A DNA stretch of 64,000 nucleotides from contig OZ296649.1 of the NCBI GenBank assembly GCA_965655095.1, positions 56,358,001 to 56,422,000 of the forward strand, written 5' to 3'. The translations under genes and the position numbers were made by a program. Below are positions 926-50,052 of the stretch, in pieces. Below the pieces are notes generated by a model. It was not told the DNA's origin. It saw only the letters and a program-made list of their open reading frames with translations, and searched no databases. The stretch is from Haplodiscus bocki. Lineage: Eukaryota. How positions within the stretch are numbered: position 1 is the stretch's first letter; each line of letters starts with the position of its first letter.

Positions 926-1175
926 GTTGAGGGGAAAAGATTAGGGGGCCGCCACGGCTTCCCCAGTAATTATATTCCTGAAAAGACACATAATGAGATG
1001 CATTGACCCATCATTATTGCTTTCATTGTCTGTGAAGCAATGTTGCCGTGCTTTGTTGGACATATTTCTTAAATCAAACTATTTAATGATTTAATTTACA
1101 ACAATTAGGCTCACAACATTTGTAGCACGAACTATTTTTTCACTGAAATAGCTACTTGCTACCACCAAAATATTA

Positions 1176-2124: not shown

Positions 2125-2284
2125 ATGTCCTTGAGCAACGGATTGGAAGATAGCGAGCATGCATCTCTAAATGGAGATGTTGGGCGAGATGATGATGAGC
2201 CAGTGCTTTTACCATCTGGTAAAAGACTCGTCGTCTATCCCATTGTGTATTCGGATTTGTGGAGTCTCTACAAAAAAGCGCAAG
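2125..2284 (+). CDS. RRM2: R2 exon 1
   Basis: MSLSNG...[29 protein letters not shown]; donor caag|gtttta, phase 1. Confidence 0.9.
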
Positions 2285-19256: not shown

Positions 19257-22200
19257 GTTAGTTGAAAGAATGTTACTGACTGTGTGTTATGGAACTAAGG
19301 AATTGAAGCATTGGACCAATAAGCACGGTTTTAGTTGATTAGGCGGCATTTCAGAACTTACCGTGCCATTGCTAACTAGAACATATTGATCAACTCTTAC
19401 TGAAGGTACTTAATGCCTAAAAGATATTTTAAAAAATCTGTAGGCACTGACGTTCTATAGCATAGCATGACTGTATAACATTACATAACACACCAAAATG
19501 TTTTGGAAGTTATCATATCCTGCATTCAAATTAGATTTCAGTCCCAACGTGGTTGTTTTAGAAAGCTGAGTTGGATCAAAATGTGAACATGCCAGAGTCC
19601 GGATCTACGAGTGCTAGTTTGAGTATCGGGGAAATGAAACAAGCTGCTTTAGACATGATGAAACGAAAAGATGAATTCGAACGGGAGAACAATCTGCTTC
19701 AAGACAGTTTGAGACAAGAGAAACTCTATTCTGAAAGTCTACAGAAAGTAAGGTTTTAGTTCGTTCCGATTAGGTGAAGTTGGCTTGATCAACCTGAAAG
19801 TGAAAACAAATACGAAACTCTACTCATTTATGCAAACTTATGATCTCTTATCAAGGAGAACAGACAGAGATAGCATCTGAGAGCCGGTCGCACTAACTTG
19901 GTTTAAGTGTTAGTGCTGTAAATTGAATTTTTAATGAATTTATTTTGCCAGTGAAATGGCACCGAATGTAATGCATTGAAAAAATTGGTTAAGTTGGAAG
20001 TTTCTGTTCGCACTTGGCGGTGACTAGACATTTCAGTACCGACGTTTTTCGCGGACATAGCTCTTCCAGGCACCCGAGTTTTAAGATAATGAAACATTTG
20101 ACGATCACGTCACCGCGCACACTCGACTCAAAATCTTTGAGGACGTAATTAAAATTAATTACACAAAAAAGATTGACTGGTTTCTTTTCGTACAAATAAT
20201 GTTAAAACCACTGTTTAACGTTTCAACCCCAAAATATCCAAGGCCAAAGTCCCAATAGACCTAAAACCAGCATACCCAAAACTAATCAGCCATACCAATT
20301 AAATAATTAAAAACTTTTTGACATTAAGTACCCAAAATACTTGAATGTTCCATGGTTACTTTATTGATATCGTAATTATGATGCTAAATGTTATTCCTCA
20401 ATACAACGAAATTCTATTCACTATTATAAATACAATGAACAAAATTACTACCTCATCTAGCATCTACTTTGCAATAACTCACTATTTTGGCTCATGCGAC
20501 AATTCGGACCAGAGACAGACAGACAGACCTGGAATCTACCTACCGTAATATTTTCCGTTTTCCAATTTTGTCAAGATGCATTAAGGACCAAGACTTCGTT
20601 AAAAGTTCGCTCTAGAAAATTTTTCTGCAGAATTTTTTTTTCATTTCTCACATAAAACAAAATGTGCCAGAATCGTGCAGTTGGCAAGTTTACGTAAAAG
20701 AACGCATGTGGCCAGTGAATCATTTTTCTTCCATGTTGAACAATGGCCGGAAAACACTAATAAAAGATCGCTCGATTTTGCGTCGAATGCGGAGTAAGTG
20801 GGGTATACTGCAAAAGATGAGGGTATCACAATTTTGTCTCTCGGTGCTAAAAATTTTGCGGGAGGAGTCACAATTTTGTACAGAGGGGAAAATTTTTTGG
20901 GTTACCCTTTAGCGTTTTCAAAAAACTGAAATTATTATTTTTTGAAGGGCAAAGTTCGAAACTTTTTTACGACCACCAAGAGAAATAATGAAAATTTAAT
21001 AATTCCAAACTACAATTTCAGGAACTTTTTGGACAATAAATACGGAATTTTGGAAATGCAGGTTTCCGCTTATTTTTTTTAGCGAAAACTAGTTTTGATT
21101 TTTTTCAAATGTTTTTCTTTGTTCAAGGTAATATTTGTAAATTTTTTTGACTTGTGGTGTTTTAACCTGACACCAACAATATTTTGAAACATTAAACCTA
21201 CGTAATCAGTATTGTTTCTAAACTTTTAGCGTTCAGCCACTGTTAATTATTCAATTAGTATAGTTATTTCACTCTTGAGTATTCTGGAATATTAGTCTTA
21301 GATATTTTGGGTTTGGGTATTTTGTCCTGCCACCCTGTTCAACAACTTATCCCTTCTGTTACACTCAATGCGTTTTTAGAAATGTTCAGCGTAATACTTT
21401 CATTCCTCAATGAGCTATACTAAATACCTTAAAACAAAACGCTGAATATAAATTACTGCACTGCATGCTTTTGAAAGTTTCCAAGCTTGTTCGATGCTCC
21501 GAGTAGTTAAACTTTCAGAATTATGTGCGTTCAATTTCTTGAAATGCTAGAACGAGAAACAAAAATGTTTTAGATAAAGCTATGTATAGGGTTTACAGAT
21601 TTGAACTCTCAAGATCTAACAGTCTTCAAGAAAAGAATTTTTTTAGAGTTGAGTCAAAACTCGTAAACCAATTTATATCTAGATTATCAAACTTTAAAAT
21701 TCTAACCAGATAATTCAAACTAGACTGTAATTGCAAATTATCAGTGTGTTAATCGACCGCTAGATAGACAGACAAAGGTAGACAATTTGATAGGAATAAA
21801 GAATTTATTTCTCCCAATTTTAAGCATAATAATTTATTGTAGACTTGAAATATCGGGACATAAAGTAACATAAATAATATTAGGAAGGCAAAATCGATTG
21901 ATGGAGAGGATAGACTATGGGCTCACTAGGAGCCCACTTGAGAGTCTATTCTGGTTATGCCTATGCTACTAATATGAACTACTAAAAAATGACAAAATAC
22001 CATTTAGATTCGTTTTTCCATTTTTTCTTTTTATACTTCAATTTTTTTTCTTTTGCTGGATGAGGTGTTTGAGCCCATACTACTGAAAAAAATTGGGCAG
22101 AGTCAGGCCTTTAGCAATGACCAAATTGCCTACTTTCAAGAATATGACATCTATCTTTAGTTGAGTGGTATATGCATAGCACCCATCTACGATGATATCA

Positions 22201-25200
22201 ACAAGCCGCCAACCACGACAATGAACTGTGCCAGGAAGAAATGTATTAGCTGCTTTTAGCCCCGGGCAGTCATCGCAGCAGTCATCGACAAGCATCAACC
22301 ATTAAGATAGTCACATTTTTATCTTTCAAAACCAAATTTTATGAGATCACTGTTTGAAATTATCTATAGATCACGGAACGTCTGAACAAAATCCGTTACT
22401 TAGCCGACTTTCAATGAACCAATTTTTTTGGGACCAAACCTTTTCGAAAAAAAGTTCACGAATTTACTTCCTTTGTGCTTGAGCGAAAATGAATGGAACG
22501 TTGATCGCTTCGATGAAATTGTAAAAGTGAGCAATCGAGAACTTCTATTACATTTTTGACCGCAATGGATTTCATAAAATTTTTTGGGAAAAGCAGTGGT
22601 TGAAAGATTATTGACCGACTTGCACACGAATTTTATGAGTATGTAGACGTAGATCTCATGCACTGTTAGAGTTTTAATGACCTCAGAAACTTTGGATACA
22701 CTTTAATGTTTGCTTTTAAAATAGGCCGAAGTATTTTTCTTTGTATTGAAAGAATTGGTTCAAGAACAGTGAAAGAAGTACATCCATAAAATAGTTTGCC
22801 ATATTGAACAATTGGTTTCACATTACAAAAATATTACTTCAGGAAAACGCTCCGTGGGACGTAATGTCTCATTTTAGACATCTCAATGCCTGGCAAGTTC
22901 GAATCTTGTATATCTGACGTGTTCACAAAACTTCAGATTTCCATTGACCAAAAACTCCTAAATACCTACAATAATCTTTGGTATTAATAAAGAGTCATTT
23001 ATTTCAACCTGCAGAGTTGAAGCACTCCTCTTTCTCTTGAAATTAATTATTTTGGACTTGCCGACATTTGCAGATAACTTATTGGAAAAAAAATCAGTCA
23101 TATACATTGGAGAGTTCGTTTTGGAAATTTGGGGAAGACAAACAAACACTTGTAATATTTGTATCGTCTTCAAACAGATACACTTGCGAGAACTGAACTG
23201 CTTTAGAAATGTCATTGTTGTACATAAGGAATAAAAGTACACAAGGAATAAAAGTGTACTAAAACGGAACCTTTCGGAACTGTTGTTATATTTACCCAAT
23301 CGCATGCTTTACCATTAACTTTTAATACTTGATTTCTCTTTGTTAGATAACTTTCCAACCATTTGTTTGCGATTCATCAATCCCCATGAGCCTCTAATTT
23401 ATTTTGCAAAATCGAGTGATATAGAGTGCCCAATGCCTTTTTGGGATCGAGGAATACACTGATAATATAAATCTCTTTGGAGCCCATACGGATAATTTCC
23501 GTTAATTCCGCCGGTGCATCTATGGTGCAATGTTTCTTGCGGAAACCCGAATGTTTGTCCTACAGCAGATGATATTTTTCCAAATAGCTATACAAACGTC
23601 TCTGCATCACCCACTCAATAATTTTACCAAACTTTGGAAGAGAAATAGGTCTGTAGTTATTCAAATCCTTGCTGCACCCAGATTTGTGGAAGAGTTTAAC
23701 TTCAGCATGTCAGGATACACTCCAGATTCAAAAGAAATGTTAATAAGTTCTGAAATGAAAGGAGCGTTTGCCCTTGCACAATTTTTGAGCTTTACATTAC
23801 TAATATTGTGTGAACCAGATGAATGTTTGCTTTTGGGCTGTTGAATTACCTTCAGGCATTCGTTTTTCTGTTCTGAAAAACTGCATTAATTGATGTGCAC
23901 GCTGATCTGTTTTTTGTGTTTTCACAGGCAAAGACTCAGCAAATTTCGGTCCAACATATACAAAATGATGATCGAAAGCATTGGCAATCTCCGTGTATTC
24001 ACATACTTTATATCGGTCTACCTTTAAGCTACTCAATTGCTTTGACTGAACCCTGTTACCACTTACTTCTTTGAATACTTGAAAAACTTGCCTCGAGTCT
24101 CCAATACAGCCCGCGAGTTTCCTAAAAAAGAATTTTTTCTTGGCAAACCTTACCGCTTGATCAACTTTTTTCCTTGCATCAAGAAAGAATCTTATTCCTT
24201 TAGTGTTTGATTCACATGGAGGTCCAAAGACTCTGACGTTGTCTCTACGATTATACTGTTCGAGATTTCCTATTTGCGACATTGAATGTAGACGGGTTCT
24301 CTTCCATTAACTTGAGTTCCTGTTTCACTTCTTTTATGACATCCTCTTTGATGGCTTGCATAGAATCGTCTACTCGAACAGTAACTACTTGAATGAATTC
24401 TTTTTTAGTGCCCCGATGTTCTTGGGCATCATTGCCCTAAATGATCGATGAATCGGTTCTTCAATTTTAATCATCATCAGTTCTTCTGTTTCACTACTAG
24501 GGCTGCTGAGTTCTGCGAAAGGTCTTTTTTGAACGTTTCCTAACCAGAGGGGTTTGATCTTGGTATCGTAACGGAAGAATCTGAGGATCATTGGTAGCAG
24601 GTCTTTTTTGAACGTTTCCTTTAACCAGAGGGGTTTGATCTTGGTATCGTAACGGAAGAATCTGAGGATCATTGGTAGCGTCTGTGGCATTCGTCATTGT
24701 GAACGAGGCCAAATCAAGTAATCTGTGGAAGCACCGTATTGTTTATTCCAAGATTCTGTCGGAAGTATGTTGCGAACTCTTTGCTGCTAAGTTTCATTTT
24801 GAAGGAAGCTCTGAATATCCTGGCAGAATTAATGGATTGTTCGCCACAATTTTTCCCACTGTCTCCAGTACTATCAACGTCTAGACAACTCTCATTATCT
24901 ATTTCAAAAGTTTGACGCAACAATTTTGTGTTTTTATTTTGAGATTGTCCGCCTTTGTTCTGTCCCGTTTGGACAGCTCCCATTTTCTCTGCCTACATTT
25001 TTGACTTTTTTCTCGTTTTGGATTCTCGCAATACTCGGGAGGCTTTACAGTAACCTATTTAGCGAAGTTGCTGTTCATACCTCAACTGCCTTGTTGTTGA
25101 TTTGGTTTTACCGCTTTTAAGGCACTAAGTTGTAAAGCTTAAGGCCTATATATTTTACTTTCTCTACACAAACGCCTGTGTGCCTGGCCAGTTCAGCGAT

Positions 25201-34200: not shown

Positions 34201-34735
34201 AAGTGCGTTCTGTACACTTGCTCAAGCAAGTGTCATGAAATCATTCAAAACACAAATATAGAGCCAAATTACGAAGCCATTTTAGGGACTGTTCCTTCAC
34301 TCTTCCAAACAGTTTTCTATTCTAGGAAATGAATTTTTGACAGTTGAAGATTTGGCTGCCATGTTTGTAAACATTTGGATTCCGTCATTTTTCCTGCGAC
34401 AAAATCACCACATATACCAAATATCGATCAGAATCAAAAACGAGGAATGGAAAGTGTTCAAAAGATATCAGCAGTTCTACGATTTTCATTGTTCTCTGAA
34501 GAAAGAATACCCCATTGTCGAAAGTTTTGAGCTACCGCCCAAAAAGACGGTTGGAAATAAAGATGCCAAATTTATTGAGGAACGCAAACGTGGTCTACAA
34601 ATATACCTGCAAAAGACAACTAATTATCTCGTGAGACAACATTCTCGCATTAGAAGCCAGTTATCCAAGGATGTTCTGATCAACTTTCTACCCTTTTTCA
34701 GCCCCGTTCATAATGCCTTCACTGTCAATAGATGA
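18024..34735 (+). CDS. SNX29: Sorting nexin-29-like protein (RUN, coiled coil, PX), 5 coding exons, ~745 aa
   Basis: join(18024-19256,19562-19747,33366-33540,33689-33922,34326-34735) = 2238 nt, GT-AG with consistent phases. RUN motifs: AVKQCQSTFGGKSQLA, LERIFHHGLK, ARGRAWIRACLNEH. Coiled coil: YEAKLVAMSGLHAELLELNEQLQ. PX: VNIWIPSFFL...HHIYQI.IRI...W.VFKRYQQFYDFH...LPPKKTVGNKDAKFIEERKRGLQ. Confidence 0.88.
19562..19747 (+). CDS. SNX29: SNX29-like exon 2
   Basis: ttttag|KAELDQ...EMKQAALDMMKRKDEFERENNLLQ...LQK|gtaagg. Confidence 0.85.
20225..21335. mobile_element. Possible non-autonomous MULE-like element with degenerate long TIRs
   Basis: Left end cccaaaatatccaagg...ccataccaattaaataattaa resembles the reverse complement of the right end (ggtggcaggacaaaatacccaaacccaaaatatctaag...ctatactaattgaataattaa). 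Confidence 0.35.
21790..25130 (-). mobile_element. Decayed, internally deleted L2/Crack-type LINE in SNX29 intron 2 ('locus A')
   Basis: ORF1 motif LEQYNRRDNVRVFG is joined to mid-ORF2. RT remnants include DDTNI, and the C-terminus reads HEIYVYILIKFVCKSVN. The long 3' UTR ends gagaaataaattctttattc. The 5' boundary is approximate. Confidence 0.8.
24520..24679. repeat. Tandem duplication, 79 + 81 bp
   Basis: aggtcttttttgaacgtttcct(tt)aaccagagggg...gatcattggtagc occurs twice. Confidence 0.9.
27250..29550. repeat. Highly diverged ~175-180 bp satellite, about 13 monomers
   Basis: Recurring core tttggac/gatcaggattccgatgc.ggaacaaaatc near 27275, 27442, 27628, 27790, 27972, 28160, 28335, 28510, 28690, 28885, 29050, 29222 and 29392. 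Confidence 0.6.
31380..31900 (-). mobile_element. Possible decayed Penelope-like element (GIY-YIG end)
   Basis: Minus-strand peptides CFKEPTI.., SEHRYTIR...DHSICTNF..H and SIKPSGQ resemble the Penelope endonuclease C-terminus. Confidence 0.4.
32635..32793. repeat. Inverted microsatellite pair: C-rich-(CA)n ... (TG)n-poly(G)
   Basis: ccccccacccacccacacacacacacacc at ~32635-32667 and tgtgtgtgtgtgtgtagggggggggggggggggg at ~32758-32792. Confidence 0.85.
33366..33540 (+). CDS. SNX29: SNX29-like exon 3
   Basis: ctcag|AVEEHKVE...LKREVDLLKSQLKRYISAV...FE g|gtgatt. Confidence 0.85.
33689..33922 (+). CDS. SNX29: SNX29-like exon 4
   Basis: ttttag|(G)STMAEL...YEAKLVAMSGLHAELLELNEQLQ...LRGPLP g|gttaat. 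Confidence 0.88.
34326..34735 (+). CDS. SNX29: SNX29-like exon 5 (PX domain, last)
   Basis: tctag|(G)NEFLTVEDL...VNIWIPS...KRYQQF...PPKK...ERKRGLQIYL...LPFFS...*. Confidence 0.9.
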
Positions 34736-35182
34736 GTAGCCGATCTGTGTTCACATATCATAAATTATCTATTTATGCATTCAAGTAATTTAACAACTCA
34801 GTTGTCTAGCTTTAGAAGTGAAGTTTCAATAGCTTAAATTTTTATTTTGGCAATTTGATAATGAATTGAGATCGTTTTTTTTTGCTAGAATGGAATCAGC
34901 CTAGTTGGAAATGACTATTGTTTCCTGTATATATGAAATGAAATTTTTCGTAGTTTATTGAGATCAGTTCATCAATTATTTTTCGAATGTGTGCCATAAA
35001 CAACGGGTAGTCACTAGTGAGTGTCTGGGAGGCAAAGTGATCACGAAAAATTCTATGCGATCACGAAAATTTTTTTTCTACCGTCCTATGCGTCACAGGT
35101 GCCTATGATTATTAATTCTAACTACTAGCACACAGTATCTTTAATCATTGATCTTTATTTGTATTTTTTGCTGGCTGCTGAC

Positions 35183-35190
35183 TATAAATA
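35183..35190 (+). promoter_or_regulatory. Candidate TATA box of the third gene
   Basis: TATAAATA lies upstream of a donor (cag|gtaaat at 35278) and an acceptor (ttttcag| at 35390), suggesting a 5' UTR exon and a 113-nt intron. Confidence 0.35.
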
Positions 35191-35396
35191 GTGATTCGAG
35201 AACCGATTACGTCAAACTTGTGTAACTTATTTAAGGAAAAGTATAATGTATCAAACGAAGAAGATGTGATTAAACAGGTAAATAATGCGTTTTGCATTGG
35301 GTTATTGAACCAATCGAAGTTATAAACTTGTTTTCAGCAAAGTTTGACGTTAGATTTTTTGCAATAGTAGCGCTTTTTTGATATTTTCAGGTTAAA

Positions 35397-35534
35397 ATGA
35401 GTGGCAATCAGGGCTTAAATAGTATGCGGACTTTATTAAAAGACTTCAACACAATGTACAAAGAACGTTTGACTGCCATTGAGAGTGATGAAGATAGAGA
35501 AGGGGATGGAAATCAGAGTCTACGAACTTACAAG
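35397..35534 (+). CDS. Probable first coding exon of an unidentified (helical/coiled-coil?) protein
   Basis: ttttcag|gttaaaATG MSGNQGLNSMRTLLKDFNTMYKERLTAIESDEDREGDGNQSLRTYK|gttttc. It has a clean acceptor, ATG context and phase-0 donor, but no downstream exon was identified. Confidence 0.6.
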
Positions 35535-36834
35535 GTTTTCTCTTTTGATGAAAGTCTTGTTTACTAATTTGAATGTTTGAATACTTGAAAATGAATAGGT
35601 CCAAATGAGTGAGTTCAATTCATGTTCATGAAAAAAATCAAGGCGCAACTTATTTAGCTTTAGAAGCAAGTAATGCACTGTTTTTTTGTTACTGTTTTAT
35701 ATTTACAAATGGGACCATTCGTTTTCCATGCGTCAAAAGTCGATTTTTTTCTCTTTGCTTCCTTTTTCAACTAACTTATTTGCTGTTATAATACCCTTTC
35801 AATTCACTTTTTAATATTGATTGCTTTTTTCCTAGCCATCTTTGAGTTGCATAAGTTCTAGGTGATCAATTTAAGAAACTGTCGGAAGAGGAGTCATGCA
35901 AGCTTCTGAGAGCGAAATGTTATGAATTCCGTCTATTTTGAGCACTTTACCATGAGAAAGTTTTGGGAAGCATGGCGAGGCTAAGTACAGGCATTGAATT
36001 TAGTAGCCTTAGGTGTAAGCGTAGATTTTTCGAGTTTCTCAGGGCCAGTGTATAGGAGAGTTTGCGGTATATCGAATTTGCTTTATATCGCGATTCAACT
36101 GTAGAAAATCTGTTTGAAAATCCTGAGCTAAAAATCAAAATTAGGTGCAACTGAGGTGAAACGTTGTTGCTTGTTATTGCAGTGGGAGTTCATTTGAATT
36201 TTTATGACTTCGGAAATTTTTAATTTACGAAGTAGTTGTGTAACTGTTTTTTGACGCTTTTCCGTACCCTATTTTGAGACTTCGTCCGACATGAGAATAT
36301 TCGTGCGACAGTTTAAAAAAAATTAAATGAAAACGGAGCAGAGCTTCGTGAGAGTTCCGGAGGGACTAAATGGACCACCATAGCAGCAGTGAGAGCGCTC
36401 TAACCAACAATATTTTGAATTCTTTTCTTGTTTCCCAGTCAATATACTTACAAAAGTTTAAACCCCGGTTAAGAACTTCATTTATCCCAACTTCTGGGGA
36501 AACAGAATAACGGTTAATGGGGGAACGCATGGTTAATTTGAACATTTTCCGAAATCCTATCCGCCTTGGGCGGCTATGTTTGAATCTTGATTACCAAACT
36601 TAGGATGAGTTCTTTAAGTTTCAAGATAGCACAATATTCTGAGTTTCCCGTAGATTTGTGAGCTATTATATTGCATCATGCTTTGTTACCATTGTGTTAA
36701 CGACCTGGAAGCATTTCTATTGATTTTAGCTTGGTCATGAATTTTACGTATGAGATTTTGAAATAGCTTTGAAATTTGACTAATTTGGAGTACGCAATTG
36801 ATAATATCACCTTCACTGAACCAAAGAAGTATTA

Positions 36835-38211
36835 AGAAAGAATGAAAGAATTCATTTCTCCCACTTTTAAGAATAACAATTTATTGCAGATTTGAAATAT
36901 CGTAACATGAAATAACATAATGATATTATGAAGACAAAATCGATCGATGGAGAGGATGGACTAAGAGCTCACTAGGAGCCCATTTGACAGTCTACCCCGG
37001 CTATGTGTATGCTACTAAAATGATTTACTAAAAAATGACAAAATACCATTTAGACTCGTTTTTCGATTTTTTCTTTTATACTTCAATTTTTTTTCTTTTG
37101 CTGGATGAGGTGTTTTTTGAGCCCATACTACTGAAAAAAATTGGGCAGAGTCAGGCCTTTAGCAATGACCAAATATGCCTATTTTCAAGAATATGACATC
37201 TATCTTTAGTTGAGTGGTATATGCATAGCACCCAACTATGATGATATCAGCAAGCCACCAACCCCAACGATGAACTGTGCCAGGAAGACATCTATTAGTT
37301 GCTTTTGACCCCGGGCAGTCGGCGTAGCAACGACAAGCATCAACCATCAAGATAGTCAGATTCTTATCTTTCGAAAACAAGTTTTCAAGATCTATCTTTG
37401 AAAGTATATAAAGATCACGGAACGTTTGAACAAAATCCATTACTTCGCCGTCTTTCATTGAGCCAAATTTTATGGAAGCAAACCTTTTCAACTCAAAAAA
37501 TTCAGAAACCTACTGCCTCTGTGCTTGAGTGAAAAAGAAGGAACGTTGATCGCTTGGATGAAATTGTCAAACTAAAATTGAGCGTTCGAGAACCTCTAGT
37601 ACATTTTTGACCGGAATTGAGATCATAAAAGTTTTTGGAAAAAGTAGTGGTTGGAAAATTATTGACTGACTTGCAAACGAATTTTTTGAGTTCATAGACA
37701 TAGAGCTCATGCACTTAGAATTTTCATGTCCTCGACAACTTTGAATACACTCATGTTTGCTTTTAATATAAGCCGAAGTATTTTTCTTTGCATTGATAGA
37801 ATTGGTTCAAGAACAGTGAAAGGAGTACATCCATAAAATAGTATACCATATTGAACAATTGGTTTCACTTTACGAAAGTCATACTTCAGCAAAACGCTTC
37901 GCGGGACGTAATGTGTCATTTTAGAGATCACGCCCGAATGCCTGGAAATTTTGAATCTTAAATATCTGACATGGTCTCAAAATTTCAGATTTCCATCTAC
38001 CAAAACTCCTAAATAATTACAATAACCTTTGGTATTTAAGAAAGACTCATTTGCTTCAACCTGCAGAGTTGAAGAACTCTTTCTGTTGAAATTAACTAAA
38101 TTTGACTTGCCAACATTTACAGATAACTTATTGGGAAGGAACCAGTCGCATATATAGGAGAGATCGTTTTGAAAACTTGCGGTAGACGAACAAACACTTG
38201 TAATGTTGGTA
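36835..38211 (-). mobile_element. 5'-truncated L2/Crack-type LINE ('locus B'), same family as 21790-25130
   Basis: Collinear but diverged homolog of 21790-23160, truncated at the RT DTNIT motif, with a (TTTC)-rich tail near 36835. Confidence 0.85.
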
Positions 38212-38248
38212 TTCGTTTTCTGATTGAAGATATAGCTGCTAAACTAAA

Positions 38249-41200
38249 TAAAAGATCGCTCGATTTTGCGTCGAATGCGGAGTAAGTGGGGTATGCTGCA
38301 AAAGATGAGGGTATCACAATTTTGTCTCTCAGTGCTAAAAATTTTGCAGGAGGAGTCACAATTTTGTACAGAGGGGAAAATTTCTTGGGTTACTCTTTAG
38401 TGTTTTAAAAAAACTGTGAAATTATTATTTTTTGAAGGGCAAAGTTCGAACCTTTTTTACGACCACCAAGAGAAATAATGAAATTTTAGTAATTCCAAAC
38501 TAAAATTTCGGAAAATTTTTGGACAATAAAAACGGACTTTTAGAAATGCAGGTTTCCGCCTAATTTTTTTTAGCGAAAACTAGTTTTGATTTTTTTAAAA
38601 ATGTTTTTCTTTGTTCAAGGTAATATTTGTAAATTTTTTTGACATGTGGTGTTTTAACCTGACACCAACAATATTTTGAAACATTAAACCTACGTAATCA
38701 GTAGTGTTTCGAAACTTTTAGCGTTCAGCCACTGTTAATTATTCAATTAGTATAGTTATTTCACTCTTGAGTATTCTGGAATTTTAGTCTTAGATGTTTT
38801 GGGTTTGGGTGTTTTGTCCTGCCACCCTGTTCAACAACTTATCCCTTCTGTTGCACTCAATGCGTTTTTAGAAGGAAATGTTCAGCGTAATACTTTCATT
38901 CCTCAATGAGCTATACTAAATACCTTAAAACAAAACGCTGAATATAAATTACTGCACTGCATGCTTCTGAAAGTTTCCAAGCATGTTCGATGCTCCGAGT
39001 AGTTAAACTTTCAGAATTATGTGCGTTCAAATTCTTGAAATGCTAGAACGAGAAACAAAAATGTTTCAGATAAAGCTATGTATAAGGTTTACAGATTTGA
39101 AATCTCAAGATCTAACAGCCTTCAAGAAAAGATTTTTTTAGAGTTGAGTCAAAACTCGTAAACCAATTTATAGCTGGATTATCAAACATTAAAATTCTAA
39201 CCAGATATTTCAAACTAGACTGTAATTGCAAATTATCAGTGTGTTAATCGAACGCTAGATAGACAGACAAAGGTAAACAATATGATAGGAATAAAGATTT
39301 TATTTCTCCCAATTTTAAGCATATTAATTTATTGTAGACTTGAAATATCGCAACATAAAATAACATAAATAATATTAGGAAGGCAAAATCGATCAATGGA
39401 GAGGATAGACTATGGGCTCATTAGGAGCCCACTTGAGAGTCTATTCTGGCTATGCCTATGCTACTAAAATGAACTACTAAAATGACCAAGTACCATATAG
39501 ATTCGTTTTCGATTTTTTTAATACTTCGATTTTTGATTTTTTGCTGGATGAGGTGTTTATGAGCCCATGCTACTGGAAAGAAATTGGGCAGAGTAAGGCC
39601 TTTAGCAATGACCAAAAAAGCCCTTTTCCAAAAAAATGACTATCTTTTGTTGAGTGCTATATGCATAGCACCCATCCACGATGATATCAACAAGCCGCCA
39701 ACCACCACAACGAACTGTGCCAGGAAGAAATGTATTAGTTGCTTTTGGCCCCGGGCAGTCATCGCAGCAGCCATCGACAAGCATCAACCATCAAGATAGT
39801 CACATTTTCACCTTTCAAAACCAAATTTTATGAGATCACTGTTTGAAAGTATCTAAAGATCACGGAACGTTTGAACAAAATCCGTTACCTAGCCGACTTT
39901 CGATGAACCAATTTTTTTTGGGACCAACACCTTTTCGAATCAAAAAGTTCACGAATTTACTTCCTTTGTGCTTGAGCGAAAAGGAATGGAACGTTGATCG
40001 CTTCGATGAAATTGTAAAAGTGAGCAATCGAGAACTTCTATCACATTTTTGACCGGAATGGATTTCTAAAAATTTTTGGAAAAAGCAGTGGTTGAAAGAT
40101 TATTGACCGACTTGCACACGAATTTTATGAGTTCATAGACGTAGAGCTCATGCACTGTTAGAATTTTAATGTCCTCAAAAACTTTGGATACACTCTCATG
40201 TTTGCTTTTAATATAAGCCGAAGTGTTTTTCTTTGCATTGATAGAATTGATTCGAGAACAGTGAAAGAAGTACATCCATGAACTAGTATACCATATTGAA
40301 CAATTGGTTTCACTTTACAAAAGTCATACTTCAGCAAAACGCTTCGCGGGACGTAATGTGTCATTTTAGAGATCACGCCCGAATGCCTGGAAAGTTTGAA
40401 TCTTAAATATCTGACATGGTCTCAAATTTTCAGATTTCCATCTACCAAAACTCCTAAATACTTACAATAATCTTTGGTATTTAAGAAAGACTCATTTACT
40501 TCAACCTGCAGAGTTGAAGAACTCCTCTTTCTGTTGAAATTAACTAAATTTGACTTGCCAACATTTACAGATAACTTATTGGGAAGGAACCAGTCGCATA
40601 TATAGGAGAGATCGTTTTGAAAACTTGCGGAAGACGAAAACACTTGTAATGTTGGTATTCGTTTTCTGATTGAAGGTATAGCTGCTAAACTAAATAAAAG
40701 ATCGCTCGATTTTGCGTCGAATGCGGAGTAAGTGGGGTATACTGCAAAAGATGAGGGTAGCACAATTTTGTCTGTCAGTGCTAAAAATTTTGCGGGAGGA
40801 GTCACAATTTTGTACAGAGGTGAAAGTTTCTTGGGTTACCCTTTAGTGTTTTCAAAAAACTGTGAAGTTATTATTTTTTGAAGGGAAAAGTTCGAAACTT
40901 TTTTACGACCACCAAGAGAAATAATGAAAATTTAGTAATTCCAAACTAAAATTTCAGAAAATTTTTGGACAATAAAAACGGACTTTTAGAAATGCAGGTT
41001 TCCGCCTATTTTTTTTAGCGAAAACTAGTTCTGATTTTTTTAAGAATGTTTTTCTTTGTTCAAGGTAATATTTGTAATTTTTTTTGACTTGTGGTGTTTT
41101 AACCTGACACCAACAATATTTTGAAACATTAAACCTACGTAATCTGTAGTGTTTCGAAACTTTTAGCGTTCAGCCACTGTTAATTATTCAATTAGTATAG

Positions 41201-44200
41201 TTATTTCAATCTTGAGTATTCTGGAATTTTAATCTTAGATATTTTGGGTTTGGGTATTTTGTCCTGCCACCCTGTTCAACAACTTATCCCTTCTGTTGCA
41301 CTCAATGCGTTTTTAGAAGGAAATGTTCAGCGTAATACTTTCATTCCTCAATGAGCTATACTAAATACCTTAAAACAAAACGCTGAATATAAATTACTGC
41401 ACTGCATGCTTCTGAAGGTTTCCAAGCATGTTCGATGCTCCGAGTAGTTAAACTTTCAGAATTATGTGCGTTCAAATTCTTGAAATGCTAGAACGAGAAA
41501 CAAAAATGTTTCAGATAAAGCTATGTATAAGGTTTACAGATTTGAACTCTCAAGATATAACAGCCTTCAAGAAAAGATTTTCTTTAGAGTTGAGTCAAAA
41601 CTCGTAAACCAATTTATAGCTGGATTATCAAACTTTAAAATTCTAACCAGATAATTCAAACTAGACTGTAATTGCAAATTATCAGTGTGTTAATCGAACG
41701 CTAGATAGACAGACAAAGGTAAACAATATGATAGGAATAAAGAATTTATTTCTCCCAATTTTAAGCATATTAATTTATTGTAGACTTGAAATATCGCAAC
41801 ATAAAATAACATAAATAATATTAGGAAGGCAAAATCGATCAATGGAGAGGATAGACTATGGGCTCATTAGGAGCCCACTTGAAAGTCTATTCTGGCTATG
41901 CCTATGCTACTAAAATGAACTACTAAAATGACAAAGTGCCATATAGATTCGTTTTCGATTTTTTTAATACTTCGATTTTTGATTTTTTGCTGGATGAGGT
42001 GTTTATGAGCCCATGCTACTGGAAAGAAATTGGGCAGAGTAAGGCCTTTAGCAATGACCAAAAAAGCCCTTTTCCAAAAAAATGACTATCTTTTGTTGAG
42101 TGCTATATGCATAGCACCCATCCACGATGATATCAACAAGCCGCCAACCACCACAACGAACTGTGCCAGGAAGAAATGTATTAGTTGCTTTTGGCCCCGG
42201 GCAGTCATCGCAGCAGCCATCGACAAGCATCAACCATCAAGATAGTCACATTTTCACCTTTCAAAACCAAATTTTATGAGATCACTGTTTGAAAATATCT
42301 AAAGATCACGGAACGTTTGAACAAAATCCGTTACCTAGCCGACTTTCGATGAACCAATTTTTTCTGGGACCAACACCTTTTCGAATGAAAAAGTTCACGA
42401 ATTTACTTCCTTTGTGCTTGAGCGAAAAGGAATGGAACGTTGATCGCTTCGATGAAATTGTAAAAGTGAGCAATCGAGAACTTCTATCACATTTTTGACC
42501 GGAATGGATTTCATAAAAATTTTTGGAAAAAGCAGTGGTTGAAAGATTATTGACCGACTTGCACACGAATTTTATGAGTTCATAGACATAGAGCTCATGC
42601 ACTGTTAGAATTTTAATGTCCTCAAAAACTTTGGATACACTCTCATGTTTGCTTTTAATATAAGCCGAAGTGTTTTTCTTTGCATTGATAGAATTGATTC
42701 GAGAACAGTGAAAGAAGTACATCCATGAACTAGTATACCATATTGAACAATTGGTTTCACTTTACAGAAGTCATACTTCAGCAAAACGCTTCGCGGGACG
42801 TAATGTGTCATTTTAGAGATCACGCCCGAATGCCTGGAAAGTTTGAATCTTAAATATCTGACATGGTCTCAAATTTTCAGATTTCCATCTACCAAAACTC
42901 CTAAATACTTACAATAATCTTTGGTATTTAAGAAAGACTCATTTACTTCAACCTGCAGAGTTGAAGAACTCCTCTTTCTGTTGAAATTAACTAAATTTGA
43001 CTTGCCAACATTTACAGATAACTTATTGGGAAGGAACCAGTCGCATATATAGGAGAGATCGTTTTGAAAACTTGCGGAACACGAAAACACTTGTAATGTT
43101 GGTATTCGTTTTCTGATTGAAGGTATAGCTGCTAAACTAAATAAAAGATCGCTCGATTTTGCGTCGAATGCGGAGTAAGTGGGGTATACTGCAAAAGATG
43201 AGGGTAGCACAATTTTGTCTCTCAGTGCTAAAAATTTTGCGGGAGGAGTCACAATTTTGTACAGAGGTGAAATTTTCTTGGGTTACCCTATAGTGTTCTC
43301 AAAAAACTGTGCAGTTACTATTTTTTGAAGGGCAAAGTTCAAAACTTTTTTACGACCACCAAGAGAAATAATGAAAATTTAGTCATTCCAAACTAAAATT
43401 TCAGAAACTTTTTGGACATTAAAAACGGACTTTTAGAAATGCAGGTTTCCGCTAATTTTTTTTTAGCGAAAACTAATTTTGATTTCTTTAAAAATGTTTT
43501 TCTTTGTTCAAGGTAATATTTGTAAATTTTTTTGACTTGTGGTGTTTCAACCTGACACCAACAATATTTTGAAACATTAAACCTACGTAATCAGTAGTGT
43601 TTCGAAACTTTTAGCGTTCAGCCACTGTTAATTATTCAATTCGTATAGATATTTCAATCTGGAGTATTCTGGAATTTTAGTCTTAGATATTTTGGGTTTG
43701 GGTATTTTTTCATGCCACCCTGTTCAACAACTTATTCCTTCTGTTACACTCAATGCGTTTTTAGAAAGAATTGTTCAGCGTAATACTTTCATTCCTCAAT
43801 GAGCTATACTAAATACCTTAAAACAAAACGCTGAATATAAATTACTGCACTGCATGCTTCTGAGAGTTTCCAAGCATGTTCGATGCTCCGAGTAGTTAAA
43901 CTTTCAGAATTATGTGCGTTCAAATGCTTGAAATGCTAGAACGAGAAACAAAAATGTTTCAGATAAAGCTATGTATAAGGTTTACAGATTTGAAATCTCA
44001 AGATCTAACAGCCTTCAGGAAAAGATTTTTTTAGAGTTGAGTCAAAACTCGTAAACCAATTTATAGCTGGATTATCAAACATTAAAATTCTAACCAGATA
44101 TTTCAAACTAGACTGTAATTGCAAATTATCAGTGTGTTAATCGAACGCTAGATAGACAGACAAAGGTAAACAATATGATAGGAATAAAGAATTTATTTCT

Positions 44201-47200
44201 CCCAATTTTAAGCATATTAATTTATTGTAGACTTGAAATATCGCAACATAAAATAACATAAATAATATTAGGAAGGCAAAATCGATCAATGGAGAGGATA
44301 GACTATGGGCTCATTAGGAGCCCACTTGAGAGTCTATTCTGGCTATGCCTATGCTACTAAAATGAACTACTAAAATGACCAAGTACCATATAGATTCGTT
44401 TTCGATTTTTTTAATACTTCGATTTTTGATTTTTTGCTGGATGAGGTGTTTATGAGCCCATGCTACTGGAAAGAAATTGGGCAGAGTAAGGCCTTTAGCA
44501 ATGACCAAAAAAGCCCTTTTCCAAAAAAATGACTATCTTTTGTTGAGTGCTATATGCATAGCACCCATCCACGATGATATCAACAAGCCGCCAACTACCA
44601 CAATGAACTGTGCCAGGAAGAAATGTATTAGTTGCTTTTGGCCCCGGGCAATCATCGCAGCAGCCATCGACAAGCATCAACCATCAAGATAGTCACATTT
44701 TCACCTTTCAAAACCAAATTTTATGAGATCACTGTTTGAAAATATCTAAAGATCACGGAACGTTTGAACAAAATCCGTTACCTAGCCGACTTTCGATGAA
44801 CCAATTTTTTTTGGGACCAACACCTTTTCGAATGAAAAAGTTCACGAATTTACTTCCTTTGTGCTTGAGCGAAAAGGAATGGAACGTTGATCGCTTCGAT
44901 GAAATTGTAAAAGTGAGCAATCGAGAACTTCTATCACATTTTTGACCGGAATGGATTTCATAAAAATTTTTGGAAAAAGCAGTGGTTGAAAGATTATTGA
45001 CCGACTTGCACACGAATTTTATGAGTTCATAGACGTAGAGCTCATGCACTGTTAGAATTTTAATGTCCTCAAAAACTTTGGATACACTCTCATGTTTGCT
45101 TTTAATATAAGCCGAAGTGTTTTTCTTTGCATTGATAGAATTGATTCGAGAACAGTGAAAGAAGTACATCCATGAACTAGTATACCATATTGGACAATTG
45201 GTTTCACTTTACAAAAGTCATACTTCAGCAAAACGCTTCGCGGGAGGTAATGTGTCATTTTAGAGATCACGCCCGAATGCCTGGAAAGTTTGAATCTTAA
45301 ATATCTGACATGGTCTCAAATTTTCAGATTTCCATCTACCAAAACTCCTAAATACTTACAATAATCTTTGGTATTTAAGAAAGACTCATTTACTTCAACC
45401 TGCAGAGTTGAAGAACTCCTCTTTCTGTTGAAATTAACTAAATTTGACTTGCCAACATTTACAGATAACTTATTGGGAAGGAACCAGTCGCATATATAGG
45501 AGAGATCGTTTTGAAAACTTGCGGAAGACGAAAACACTTGTAATGTTGGTATTCCTTTTCTGATTGAAGATATAGCTGCTAAACTAATCAAAAGATCGCT
45601 CAATTTTGCGTCAAATGCGGAGTAAGTGGGGTTTCTGGATTTAATCTTCGAAGAGAGTTTAACGAAGTTTCTGAATTATAATTGTTGGTGCTCTTGGACT
45701 CAATGAAACTTTCATCTGTTGCTCGCGAGCTGCCAAATTGCCATTGTCGTTCATACTGTCACTTATGCGGAAAAATATTGTCAAGTTTATCACGAAAAAG
45801 TAGTCTTAGATATTTTGGGTTTGGGTATTTTTTCCTGGCACCCTGTTCAACAACTTATCCCTTCTGTTACACTCAATGCGTTTTTAGAAAGAAATCTTCA
45901 GCGTAATACTTTCATTCCTCAATGAGCTATACTAAATACCTTAAAACAAAACGCTGAATATAAATTACTGCACTGCATGCTTCTGAGAGTTTCCAAGCAT
46001 GTTCGATGCTCCGAGTAGTTAAACTTTCAGAATTATGTGCGTTCAAATTCTTGAAATGCTAGAACGAGAAACAAAAATGTTTCAGATAAAGCTATGTATA
46101 AGGTTTACAGATTTGAACTCTCAAGATCTAACAGCCTTCAAGAAAAGATTTTTTTAGAGTTGAGTCAAAACTCGTAAACCAATTTATAGCTGGATTATCA
46201 AACATTAAAATTCTAACCAGATAATTCAAACTAGACTGTAATTGCAAATTATCAGTGTGTTAATCGAACGCTAGATAGACAGACAAAGGTAAACAAATTG
46301 ATAGGAATGAAGAATTTATTTCTCCCAATTTTAAGCGTAATAATTTATTGTAGACTTGAAATATCGCAACATAAAATAACATAATTAATATTAGGAAGGC
46401 AAAATCGATCAATGGAGAGGATAGACTATGGGCTCATTAGGAGCCCACTTGAAAGTCTATTCTGGCTATGCCTATGCTACTAAAATGAACTACTAAAATG
46501 ACCAAGTACCATATAGATTCGTTTTCGATTTTTTTAATACTTCGATTTTTGATTTTTTGCTGGATGAGGTGTTTATGAGCCCATGCTACTGGAAAGAAAT
46601 TGGGCAGAGTAAGGCCTTTAGCAATGACCAAAAAAGCCCTTTTCCAAAAAAATGACTATCTTTTGTTGAGTGCTATATGCATAGCACCCATCCACGATGA
46701 TATCAACAAGCCGCCAACCACCACAATGAACTGTGCCAGGAAGAAATGTATTAGTTGCTTTTGGCCCCGGGCAGTCATCGCAGCAGCCATCGACAAGCAT
46801 CAACCATCAAGATAGTCACATTTTCACCTTTCAAAACCAAATTTTATGAGATCACTGTTTGAAAATATCTAAAGATCACGGAACGTTTGAACAAAATCCG
46901 TTACCTAGCCGACTTTCGATGAACCAATTTTTTTTGGGACCAACACCTTTTCGAATCAAAAAGTTCACGAATTTACTTCCTTTGTGCTTGAGCGAAAAGG
47001 AATGGAACGTTGATCGCTTCGATGAAATTGTAAAAGTGAGCAATCGAGAACTTCTATCACATTTTTGACCGGAATGGATTTCATAAAAATTTTTGGAAAA
47101 AGCAGTGGTTGAAAGATTATTGACCGACTTGCACACGAATTTTATGAGTTCATAGACGTAGAGCTCATGCACTGTTAGAATTTTAATGTCCTCAAAAATT

Positions 47201-50052
47201 TGGATACACTCTCATGTTTGCTTTTAATATAAGCCGAAGTGTTTTTCTTTGCATTGATAGAATTGATTCGAGAACAGTGAAAGAAGTACATCCATGAACT
47301 AGTATACCATATTGAACAATTGGTTTCACTTTACAAAAGTCATACTTCAGCAAAACGCTTCGCGGGACGTAATGTGTCATTTTAGAGATCACGCCCGAAT
47401 GCCTGGAAAGTTTGAATCTTAAATATCTGACATGGTCTCAAAATTTAAGATTTCCATCTACCAAAACTCATAAATACTTACAATAATCTTTGGTATTTAA
47501 GAAAGACTCATTTACTTCAACCTACAGAGTTGAAGAACTCCTCTTTCTGTTGAAATTAACTATATTTGACTTGCCAACATTTACAGATAACTTATTGGGA
47601 AGGAACAAGTCGCATATATATGAGAGATCGATTTGAAAACTTGCGGAAGACGAACAAACACTTGTAATGTTGATATTCGTTTTCTGATTGAAGATATAGC
47701 TGCTAAACTAATCAAAAGATCGCTCAATTTTGCGTCAAATGCGGAGTAAGTGGGGTTTCTGGGTTTAATCTTCGAAGAGAGTTTAACGAAGTTTCTGAAT
47801 TATAATTATTGGTGCTCTTGGACTCAATGAAACTTTCATCTGTTGCTCGCGAGCTGCCAAATTGCCATTGTCGTTCATACTGTCACTTATGCGGAAAAAT
47901 ATTGTCAAGTTTATCACGAAAAAGTAGTCTTAGATATTTTGGGTTTGGGTATTTTTTCCTGCCACCCTGTTCAACAACTTATCCCTTCTGTTACACTCAA
48001 TGCGTTTTTAGAAAGAAATCTTCAGCGTAATACTTTCATTCCTCAATGAGCTATACTAAATACCTTAAAACAAAACGCTGAATATAAATTACTGCACTGC
48101 ATGCTTCTGAGAGTTTCCAAGCATGTTCGATGCTCCGAGTAGTTAAACTTTCAGAATTATGTGCGTTCAAATTCTTGAAATGCTAGAACGAGAAACAAAA
48201 ATGTTTCAGATAAAGCTATGTATAAGGTTTACAGATTTGAACTCTCAAGATCTAACAGCCTTCAAGAAAAGATTTTTTTAGAGTTGAGTCAAAACTCGTA
48301 AAACAATTTATATGCTGGATTATCAAACTTTAAAATTCTAACCAGATAATTCAAACTAGACTGTAATTGCAAATTATCAGTGTGTTAATCGAACGCTAGA
48401 TAGACAGACAAAGGTAAACAAATTGATAGGAATGAAGAATTTATTTCTCCCAATTTTAAGCATAATAATTTATTGTAGACTTGAAATATCGCAACATAAA
48501 ATAACATAATTAATATTAGGAAGGCAAAATCGATCAATGGAGAGGATAGACTATGGGCTCATTAGGAGCCCACTTGAAAGTCTATTCTGGCTATGCCTAT
48601 GCTACTAAAATGAACTACTAAAATGACAAAGTACCATATAGATTCGTTTTCGATTTTTTTAATACTTCGATTTTTGATTTTTTGCTGGATGAGGTGTTTA
48701 TGAGCCCATGCTACTGGAAAGAAATTGGGCAGAGTAAGGCCTTTAGCAATGACCAAAAAAGCCCTTTTCCAAAAAAATGACTATCTTTTGTTGAGTGCTA
48801 TATGCATAGCACCCATCCACGATGATATCAACAAGCCGCCAACCACCACAATGAACTGTGCCAGGAAGAAATGTATTAGTTGCTTTTGGCCCCGGGCAGT
48901 CATCGCAGCAGCCATCGACAAGCATCAACCATCAAGATAGTCACATTTTCACCTTTCAAAACCAAATTTTATGAGATCACTGTTTGAAAATATCTATAGA
49001 TCACGGAACGTTTGAACAAAATCCGTTACCTAGCCGACTTTCGATGAACCAATTTTTTTTGGGACCAACACCTTTTCGAATCAAAAAGTTCACGAATTTA
49101 CTTCCTTTGTGCTTGAGCGAAAAGGAATGGAACGTTGATCGCTTCGATGAAATTGTAAAAGTGAGCAATCGAGAACTTCTATCACATTTTTGACCGGAAT
49201 GGATTTCTAAAAATTTTTGGAAAAAGCAGTGGTTGAAAGATTATTGACCGACTTGCACACGAATTTTATGAGTTCATAGACATAGAGCTCATGCACTGTT
49301 AGAATTTTAATGTCCTCAAAAACTTTGGATACACTCTCATGTTTGATTTTAATATAAGCCGAAGTGTTTTTCTTTGCATTGATAGAATTGATTCGAGAAC
49401 AGTGAAAGAAGTACATCCATGAACTAGTATACCATATTGAACAATTGGTTTCACTTTACAAAAGTCATACTTCAGCAAAACGCTTCGCGGGAGGTAATGT
49501 GTCATTTTAGAGATCACGCCCGAATGCCTGGAAAGTTTGAATCTTAAATATCTGACACGGTCTGAAAATTTCAGATTTCCATCTACCAAAACTCCTAAAT
49601 ACTTACAATAATCTTTGGTTTTTAAGAAAGACTCATTTACTTGAAACTGCAGAGTTGAAGAATTCCTCTTTCTGTTGAAATTAACTAAATTTGACTTGCC
49701 AACATTTACAGATAACTTATTGGGAAGGAACCAGTCGCATATATAGGAGAGATCGTTTTGAAAACTTGCGGGAGACGAACAAACACTTGTAATGTTGGTA
49801 TTCGTTTTCTGATTGAAGATATAGCTGCTAAGCTAAATAAAAGATCGCTCAATTTTGCGTCAAATGCGGAGTAAGTGGGGTTTCTGGGTTTAATCTTCGA
49901 AGAGAGTTTAACGAAGTTTCTGAATTATAATTATTGGTGCTCTTGGACTCAATGAAACTTTCATCTGTTGCTCGCGAGCTGCCAAATTGCCATTGTCGTT
50001 CTTACTGTCACTTATGCGGAAAAATTTTGTCGAGTTTATCACGAAAAATAGT
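38249..50052. repeat. Young macrosatellite: ~2447-bp units (starts 38249, 40695, 43142) then ~2124-bp units (starts 45589, 47713; terminal partial from 49838); each unit carries an antisense LINE 3' fragment
   Basis: The marker aaaagatcgctc(g/a)attttgcgtc recurs at spacings 2446, 2447, 2447, 2124 and 2125, and the ORF track repeats with the same periods. Confidence 0.95.

What the first reader, a model, noticed from the sequence alone, without database searches (positions are those of the whole stretch)
20759..50052. The macrosatellite unit is a recombinant of two loci ~15 kb apart, and its origin can be read from the sequence
Seen: (i) Each 2447-bp unit begins with sequence matching SNX29 intron 2 (20759 to ~22700: a 46-bp motif, a satellite/MITE piece, a spacer and the LINE-A 3' end). 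(ii) About 1.95 kb into the unit (~40190-40210 in unit 1) diagnostic bases switch from LINE-A type (e.g. gtaaaagtgagcaatcgagaacttcta) to LINE-B type (e.g. gagatcacgcccgaatgcctgg, gggaaggaaccagtcgcatatatagg). The unit then ends with the LINE-B truncation point and flank. (iii) The 46-bp motif aataaaagatcgctc(g/a)attttgcgtc(g/a)aatgcggagtaagtggggt exists at both 20759-20804 and the right flank (49836-49881); units 1-3 carry the locus-A alleles. Inference: either a ~17.5-kb tandem duplication via the 46-bp motif (transiently duplicating SNX29 exons 3-5 and the next gene's first exon) was followed by LINE-LINE recombination deleting ~15 kb, or a double template switch or circular intermediate formed the unit. 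The chimeric remnant was then amplified. This is a clear snapshot of a satellite arising from ectopic TE recombination.
Basis: partly seen in the sequence, partly recalled or inferred. Interest (0 to 1): 0.7.

Follow-up and report, generated by a model that had tools for sequence, protein, structure and literature searches.

The report
Tandem array with a two-parent unit
A 13-kb block of five head-to-tail repeats, next to a sorting-nexin gene of an animal genome, has a unit stitched from two nearby stretches of DNA through two old copies of the same jumping gene (a LINE); it is a well-resolved but mechanistically ordinary case of how repeat DNA starts.

Summary
Window 36840-50052 is a real tandem array. 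Its unit is a mosaic of locus A (20756 onward: 46-bp motif, MITE-like repeat, unique spacer, 3' part of LINE-A) and LINE-B (36840-38242).

- **Switch:** all five units share one clean A-to-B switch. Polarised against 29 other LINE copies, 43 A-derived states lie left of U1 40168 and 44 B-derived states lie right of 40212.
- **Parents:** no third locus in the 1.5-Gb assembly is a better parent, and the composite unit is not dispersed.

- Only three units are 2447 bp. Two are 2124 bp and come from a later duplication (43678-50052, three copies) across the array's right edge.
- A 175-bp tract (A 21994-22168 = U0 37040-37217) is 98% identical between A and B but 87% to the units. This fits a later B-to-A gene conversion.
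- The units are homogenised in the LINE part and star-like in the MITE part.
- The event is not fresh: units differ 3-6% from their parents.
- The 46-bp motif is unique to these loci genome-wide, so it may not have pre-existed at B.

Two-step unequal exchange, template switching and a circle cannot be told apart here. The scan has already noted many LINE-derived arrays elsewhere in this genome.

The parts
18237..18653 (+). RUN-domain coding exon of the host gene (context)
   Evidence: PF02759 match at G000:C2:56376237-56376653, E 1.8e-18, in an open frame of 430 aa
20756..20804 (+). 46-49-bp motif, locus A copy (G/G states)
   Evidence: The 46-mer with up to 3 mismatches occurs only here and in the array in 1.5 Gb
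20805..21336 (+). MITE-like dispersed repeat with internal ~40-bp repeats, locus A copy
   Evidence: Unit positions about 49-590 match many loci at 70-80%
21337..21793 (+). Unique spacer of locus A
   Evidence: Unit positions 590-1042 match only A and the array
21794..24194 (-). LINE-A: 3' 2.4 kb of an endonuclease + reverse-transcriptase LINE, (AAAG)n-type tail at its left end
   Evidence: A full ~4.5-kb relative, L066, has a 991-aa frame with RVT_1 and Exo_endo_phos
21994..22168 (.). Tract in LINE-A that is 98.3% identical to LINE-B (37040-37217) but 87% to the units; inferred B-to-A gene conversion after the unit was born
   Evidence: Five derived states shared by A and B only; binomial p 1e-7
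22677..22719 (.). Crossover interval on the A parent
   Evidence: Last state derived with A at U1 40168 = A 22676; first state derived with B at U1 40212 = A 22720
34337..34735 (+). PX-domain coding exon lying between the two parents (context)
   Evidence: PF00787, E 4.7e-16; PX domains of KIF16B, SGK3 and sorting nexins in the PDB
36840..38217 (-). LINE-B (unit 0): 5'-truncated copy of the same LINE family, about 86% identical to LINE-A
37726..37766 (.). Crossover interval on the B parent
38218..38242 (+). 25-bp stretch after LINE-B that ends every unit
   Evidence: Only LINE-B and the units match it genome-wide
38243..40688 (+). Long unit 1 (2446 bp): motif + MITE + spacer + LINE-A part + LINE-B part + 25 bp; crossover interval 40169-40211
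40689..43135 (+). Long unit 2 (2447 bp)
43136..45582 (+). Long unit 3 (2447 bp)
45583..47706 (+). Short unit 4 (2124 bp): B-type motif + 169 bp of right flank joined to unit column 620
47707..49832 (+). Short unit 5 (2126 bp)
49833..50052 (+). Array end: B-type (A/A) copy of the motif plus the 169 bp that continue into unique right flank
43678..50052 (+). Secondary tandem triplication of 2124 bp (copies start at 43678, 45801, 47925) across the right edge of the first array; junction has TAGT microhomology and one extra G

Best explanation
This is a one-locus, nested tandem array with no sign of a function of its own.

**Shown**
- Two old copies of one LINE family lie in the same orientation about 15 kb apart in and beside an SNX29-type gene. 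They are LINE-A (21794-24194) and the 5'-truncated LINE-B (36840-38217).
- The unit was made once. All units share a homologous exchange inside the LINE copies that joins the left part of LINE-A to the right part of LINE-B. This is the deletion-type chimera, with the crossover in U1 40169-40211.
- All units also share a second joint. It puts the 25 bp after LINE-B in front of the 46-bp motif that precedes the MITE, the spacer and LINE-A at locus A.

**Inferred**
- The 2447-bp unit was then copied to at least three units. This is most simply by unequal exchange, using LINE-B and the chimeric LINE as register-shifted homology.
- Amplification came early, because the MITE part of units 1-3 is star-like.
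- A 2124-bp segment running from inside unit 3 into the right flank was later duplicated through a 4-bp microhomology, and then triplicated.
- LINE-B later converted 175 bp of LINE-A.
- Gene conversion keeps the LINE part of the units near-identical.

**Not decided**
- Which route made the two joints. It fits the motif states in units 1-3, which have the B-type extra A at the left edge and A-type G/G further right.
For: - Periods and coordinates.
- Mosaic identities.
- Same breakpoint in all five units, chi-square 97-108 against a permutation maximum of 21.
- Clean partition of 43 A-derived and 44 B-derived states.
- Parents extend beyond the chimera.
- No better donor anywhere in the genome. 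A-part: only A at 92-95%. B-part: LINE-B 95%, next 89%. Tract: next 87%..
- Motif and spacer unique to these loci.
- Secondary duplication junction.
- Conversion tract 98.3% against about 86% elsewhere, with five derived states shared by A and B only.
- Variable sites among units 1-3 fall from 12-15 per 200 bp (MITE) to 0-3 per 200 bp (LINE), while fixed A-versus-unit differences rise.
- Short-read contigs of two samples hold the unit sequences at about 2x and 4x the depth of the LINE-B-specific part.
Against: - All structure comes from one assembly. The reads available were short contigs, and none bridges a joint by 31 letters on both sides.
- No target-site duplication was found for LINE-B, so its native 5' flank is not fixed independently.
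- The motif at B is as similar to A's (2 CpG transitions and 1 indel in 49 bp) as the units are to A. It is unique in the genome, and the flanks share nothing else. It may therefore be a product of the event, or the stump of a deleted unit, rather than a pre-existing homology.
- A 46-bp homology is short for unequal crossing-over.
Confidence: 0.85

Rival explanations
1. The unit was made in one step by replication template switching. A nascent strand leaving LINE-B and its flank jumped back 17.5 kb to the motif at locus A. It copied the MITE, the spacer and part of LINE-A, then returned by LINE homology to LINE-B. No 17.5-kb duplication ever existed. This rivals only the pathway, not the chimeric origin.
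For: - The end product is the same as observed.
- It avoids an intermediate that would have doubled the PX exon.
- The region is prone to local duplication: a 1657-bp tandem pair at 8439-11750 and the 2124-bp triplication with microhomology.
Against: - Nothing in the sequence separates it from the two-step route.
- It also needs the motif at B, or an extra partial round, to explain the motif copy at the array's right end.
Confidence: 0.3
2. The A-to-B interval was excised as a circle and reduced by LINE-A x LINE-B recombination to a 2.4-kb circle. That circle was copied by rolling-circle replication and re-inserted at LINE-B as a concatemer ending 46-49 bp into a unit. On this view the motif at the right end is the last, partial unit and was never native to B.
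For: - The MITE part of units 1-3 is star-like, as if the copies were made at once.
- The motif is unique genome-wide and no older than the units.
- The flanks of A and B share nothing beyond the motif.
Against: - No circle or concatemer can be seen in a genome sequence.
- The model needs one non-homologous end joint.
- The motif states in units 1-3 (left edge B-type, rest A-type) fit an exchange inside a pre-existing motif at least as well.
Confidence: 0.15
3. The unit is a dispersed composite mobile element or was copied from a third locus, and A and B only resemble it.
For: The LINE and the MITE-like parts are each dispersed families.
Against: - No locus outside C2:56.378-56.408 Mb joins the parts.
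- The spacer, the motif and the 25-bp flank are unique to these loci.
- The best foreign LINE copies are 87-89%.
Confidence: 0.02
4. The array or its mosaic is an assembly artefact.
For: Only one assembly exists, and tandem repeats are error-prone.
Against: - Units differ at many sites in a consistent nested pattern.
- Unit-specific and shared variants appear in short-read contigs of two samples. At 38510 the unit-1 letter and the unit-2/3 letter are read at about a 1:2 depth ratio.
Confidence: 0.03

Closest known systems
Deletion-type chimeric repeat from non-allelic homologous recombination between two dispersed repeats in direct orientation (as in Alu-Alu or LINE-LINE events)
   Same: - Two same-orientation copies of one LINE family.
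- A single switch from the left parent to the right parent inside the homology.
- A later short conversion tract between the same two copies.
   Different: The 15 kb between the parents is still present, so the chimera sits in an extra copy beside parent B rather than replacing the interval. A second joint, at the 46-bp motif, is needed.
Transposon-derived satellites and tandem TE arrays (three routes in McGurk and Barbash 2018, PMC5932611: LTR-LTR exchange, rolling circle, double insertion; then unequal exchange)
   Same: - A small tandem seed holding TE sequence that can grow by unequal exchange.
- Copies are head to tail at one locus.
   Different: - The unit is not one TE.
- About 1 kb of it is a motif, a MITE-like piece and unique intron DNA.
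- Its LINE part is a hybrid of two separate insertions.
- No target-site motif sits in the junction, so it is not a double insertion.
Composite macrosatellites such as human D4Z4 (from my own knowledge, not checked here)
   Same: A kilobase-scale unit built of unrelated repeat pieces, arrayed at a specific locus.
   Different: - Only five units.
- No coding content seen.
- Both parent sequences are still next to the array.
Other LINE-derived macrosatellites noted by this scan in the same genome (s1-356337, s1-354063 and others; AI notes, not checked by me)
   Same: A piece of a dead LINE, sometimes with neighbouring DNA, copied head to tail in place.
   Different: Those are described as 22-65 copies from one parent element. 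Here there are five units with two identifiable parents and a mapped crossover.

Membership tests
Locus-specific macrosatellite / tandem array | Head-to-tail copies of a kilobase-scale unit | tested here: met
   Three units of 2447 bp and two of 2124 bp plus partial end units, 36840-50052
Locus-specific macrosatellite / tandem array | Confined to one locus, not dispersed | tested here: met
   Whole-genome searches with the unit, its first 1048 bp, the motif and the right flank hit only this array and locus A
Locus-specific macrosatellite / tandem array | Copy number varies between individuals | tested here: inconclusive
   Contig word depth of unit sequence is about 2x the LINE-B-specific depth in sample S1 and about 4x in S2. 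The tool warns that depth is not copy number
Chimera by homologous exchange between two repeats | Two parental copies in the same orientation, each extending beyond the chimera in its own type | tested here: met
   LINE-A continues to about 24194. LINE-B has its own tail and left flank at 36840
Chimera by homologous exchange between two repeats | Significant single switch of parental states, identical in all copies | tested here: met
   chi-square about 100, p<0.001 by permutation. Derived states are 43 A-type on the left and 44 B-type on the right with no exception
Chimera by homologous exchange between two repeats | No third sequence explains the parts better | tested here: met
   best foreign copies 87-89%
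Dispersed composite mobile element | Several genomic copies with the same termini and target-site duplications | tested here: not met
   No other copy; no duplicated flank found
TE tandem by double insertion (McGurk and Barbash 2018) | Complete or like-truncated elements head to tail with the target site kept in the junction | tested here: not met
   Junctions hold about 1 kb of non-LINE DNA, and the LINE part is a hybrid of two differently truncated copies
Rolling-circle / eccDNA-derived array | Circular intermediate of unit length | not testable with these tools
   Needs circle sequencing or population long reads

The most novel reading that the evidence does not exclude
The two joints, the star-like early copies and a genome-unique motif that ends the array would all come from one replicative event: template switching, or a 2.4-kb circle copied as a concatemer. 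The same process would lie behind the many LINE-containing macrosatellites that the scan has noted in this genome. This small array would then be the rare case where both templates are still readable.
Probability: 0.15. Interest if true: 0.6.

Novelty: new member of a known kind. Interest (0 to 1): 0.38.

Why it matters
Satellites and macrosatellites are usually seen long after their birth, when the parent sequences are gone. Here both parents, the crossover interval (about 43 bp), the second joint, a later duplication layer and a later conversion tract can all be read from one 30-kb stretch.

That gives a worked example of ectopic exchange between dispersed LINE copies seeding a tandem array beside a gene. 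It also shows homogenisation acting on only part of a unit. The mechanisms are standard, so this is a teaching case and a possible marker locus for copy-number variation rather than a new principle.

Tried and rejected
- **Third donor or dispersed element.** Searched the whole 1.5-Gb assembly with the full unit, its first 1048 bp, the odd 211-bp LINE stretch, the B-like 571 bp, the 46-mer and the right flank. Nothing was better than A and LINE-B.
- **Repeat of constant ends.** I first read the LINE matches ending at unit position 2416 as a 1.37-kb element with fixed ends. The alignment of 29 copies shows they continue past that point, so B really is 5'-truncated.
- **Target-site duplication.** Looked for one around LINE-B and LINE-A to fix the native flank of B. 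No shared word of 8 or more was found.
- **Older paralogy of the A and B flanks beyond the motif.** Local alignment scores equal shuffles.
- **Coding content.** Pfam on frames of LINE-A and LINE-B gave nothing. The LINE class came from a longer relative.
- **Reads.** Only short contigs of one study were on offer. They confirm presence and variant mixtures but bridge no joint and show no empty allele.
- **Gene model.** It was not assembled.
Full report
**What is there.**
- A self-comparison of the window shows two overlapping tandem periodicities.
  - 36840-43185 matches 39289-45632 at 95.8%, period 2447.
  - 43678-47928 matches 45801-50052 at 98.4%, period 2124.
- Locus A, 20756-23171, aligns to a whole unit at about 92%.
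- Tandem Repeats Finder cannot see periods above 500 and reported only two small arrays.
- The window has no N.

**Anatomy**.
- A long unit (starts 38243, 40689, 43136) has five parts:
  - a 46-49-bp motif;
  - a MITE-like repeat with internal ~40-bp repeats (unit positions about 49-590, dispersed in the genome at 70-80% identity);
  - a unique spacer (590-1042);
  - about 1.38 kb of LINE sequence on the minus strand, beginning at the element's (AAAG)n-type 3' tail;
  - 25 bp that follow LINE-B.
- Locus A has the first four parts in the same order, and its LINE runs on to about 24194.
- LINE-B (36840-38217) has its own tail and left flank. It stops where the other 29 aligned copies of the family continue, so it is a true 5' truncation.
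- The family is an endonuclease plus reverse-transcriptase LINE of about 4.5 kb. A relative, L066, has a 991-aa frame with RVT_1 and Exo_endo_phos.

**The mosaic.**

| Alignment columns | Units vs A | Units vs LINE-B | A vs LINE-B |
|---|---|---|---|
| 1125-1985 | 92-93% | 84% | 86% |
| 1985-2549 | 84-86% | 95.5-96.6% | 85% |

- Maximum chi-square places the same breakpoint in all five units (U1 40127/40133, A 22635/22641, B 37686/37692). Chi-square is 97-108, against at most 21 in 1000 permutations.
- I then polarised each A/B difference by the majority state of 29 other family copies.
  - All 43 states that the units share as derived with A lie at or left of U1 40168.
  - All 44 shared as derived with B lie at or right of 40212.
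  - The mixed sites in between are private changes of one parent.
- The crossover interval is therefore U1 40169-40211 (A 22677-22719, B 37726-37766).
- One breakpoint in all units means one founding event.

**Not a third locus and not a mobile element.** Whole-genome searches of the 1.5-Gb assembly gave these results:
- The full unit matches only locus A over its length. Other hits are LINE copies at 79-87%.
- The spacer and the motif match only A and the array.
- For the B-like 571 bp, the best match outside the array units is LINE-B at 95%. The next-best LINE copy reaches 89%, and only LINE-B and the units match the 25-bp flank.

**Second layer.**
- Units at 45583 and 47707 are 2124 and 2126 bp. 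They begin with the A/A form of the motif and 169 bp that, at 49882-50052, run on into the unique right flank. They join the unit at column 620, inside the MITE piece.
- The simplest reading is a tandem duplication of the segment from 43678 (inside unit 3) to 50052-equivalent, followed by a third copy.
- The junction shows the four letters TAGT common to both sides and one extra G.
- Before that event the array was LINE-B, three long units, then motif plus flank.

**Conversion tract.**
- In A 21994-22168 = B 37040-37217 the two parents are 98.3% identical, against about 86% on either side. The units are 87% to both (binomial p 1e-7 for the core).
- Five states there are shared by A and B but carried by 0-3 of 29 other copies, while the units keep the family state.
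- Sixteen further states are private to the units.
- No other copy in the genome is closer than 87% to the units' version.
- The economical reading is that the units keep LINE-A's original sequence and LINE-B later overwrote 175 bp of LINE-A.
- At 1.7% divergence this is younger than the unit's birth (3-6%).
- It shows that the two LINE copies have exchanged sequence at least twice.

**Age and homogenisation.**
- A differs from the units by 3-6% in the MITE, spacer and A-type LINE parts. LINE-B differs from them by 3.4-4.5% in the B-type part.
- Among units 1-3, variable sites fall from 12-15 per 200 bp in the MITE part, to 6 in the spacer, to 0-3 in the LINE part. Fixed A-versus-unit differences rise in the same direction.
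- The MITE part therefore looks like an early, nearly simultaneous amplification without later homogenisation. The LINE part evolves in concert.
- This is inference from one haplotype.

**Is the motif native to B?** Points in favour of a pre-existing motif at B:
- The motif ends the array (49833-49881).
- Units 1-3 have the B-type extra A at its left edge and the A-type G/G further right, as an exchange inside a pre-existing motif would give.

Points against:
- The 46-mer is unique to these loci in 1.5 Gb.
- The flanks of A and B share nothing else.
- The two differences are CpG transitions, so the B copy is no more diverged from A than the units are.
- No target-site duplication fixes LINE-B's native flank.
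- A terminal partial unit of a concatemer, or the stump of a deleted unit, would look the same.

I leave this open at about even odds.

**Pathway.**
- The chimera is of the deletion type (left of A, right of B), yet the 15-kb interval survives. A simple A x B unequal crossover therefore cannot be the whole story.
- Double-strand-break repair by synthesis-dependent annealing does not give it. This follows from the order of motif and LINE at the two loci and is inference.

**Gene context.**
- A RUN-domain exon lies at 18237-18653 and a PX-domain exon at 34337-34735, both on the + strand.
- This architecture fits SNX29.
- Locus A lies between them. The PX exon lies between the parents, so a 17.5-kb intermediate would have doubled it.
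- I did not build or join a gene model, and I did not check exon numbers or the 'next gene'.

**Reads.**
- Four runs of one study (two samples) hold 38-46% of the sampled words.
- Laid on 36700-42699 they are short contigs.
- They carry the unit sequences, including the letters of other units at positions where unit 1 or 2 is private.
- At 38510 the unit-1 letter and the unit-2/3 letter are read at about 1:2.
- Unit sequence has about 2x (S1) and about 4x (S2) the word depth of the LINE-B-specific part. The tool warns that this is not copy number.
- No contig bridges a joint with 31 letters on both sides, and no empty allele was seen.

**Comparison with what is known.**
- McGurk and Barbash 2018 (PMC5932611) list LTR-LTR exchange, rolling circle and double insertion as routes to TE tandems, followed by unequal exchange.
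- This array fits the general two-stage model but none of those three seeds exactly. The seed here is a hybrid of two LINE insertions plus intervening unique DNA.
- The scan has already noted many LINE-derived macrosatellites on other DNA of this genome. I did not test those notes.

**Verdict.** The kind of thing is known, and its value is the unusually complete record.

Noticed in passing
window 8439-11750: A perfect-register tandem pair of 1657 bp (8439-10095 and 10094-11750) at 99.76% identity, upstream of the RUN exon. It is a very young local duplication in the same gene region.
   Followed up: no
window 15565-15975: A 121-bp satellite of 2.8-3.4 copies at 76-78% identity. Its unit contains, in reverse orientation, the ~40-bp internal repeat of the MITE-like element found in the unit.
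   Followed up: partly
window 24520-24679: An 81-bp tandem pair at 97%, about 330 bp beyond the 5' end of LINE-A.
   Followed up: no
window 38243-45582 (units 1-3): Divergence between units is graded along the unit: about 7% variable sites in the MITE part, 3% in the spacer and under 1.5% in the LINE part. Divergence from parent A is roughly even. This indicates gene conversion confined to part of the repeat.
   Followed up: partly
L066 (G000:C8:27084800-27092800), 674-4694 minus strand: A copy of the same LINE family with long open frames (991 aa with endonuclease and reverse transcriptase, plus 365 aa upstream). The family may have been active fairly recently.
   Followed up: partly
L004 and L005 (G000:C11:8560770-8562141 and 8575240-8576611): Two copies of the LINE 14.5 kb apart with near-identical sequence and identical flanks. 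This is probably a segmental duplication on another chromosome.
   Followed up: no
window 20702-20761: The left flank of locus A, just before the motif, matches a piece of locus L039 (521-577) at 83%. It may itself be part of a repeat.
   Followed up: no
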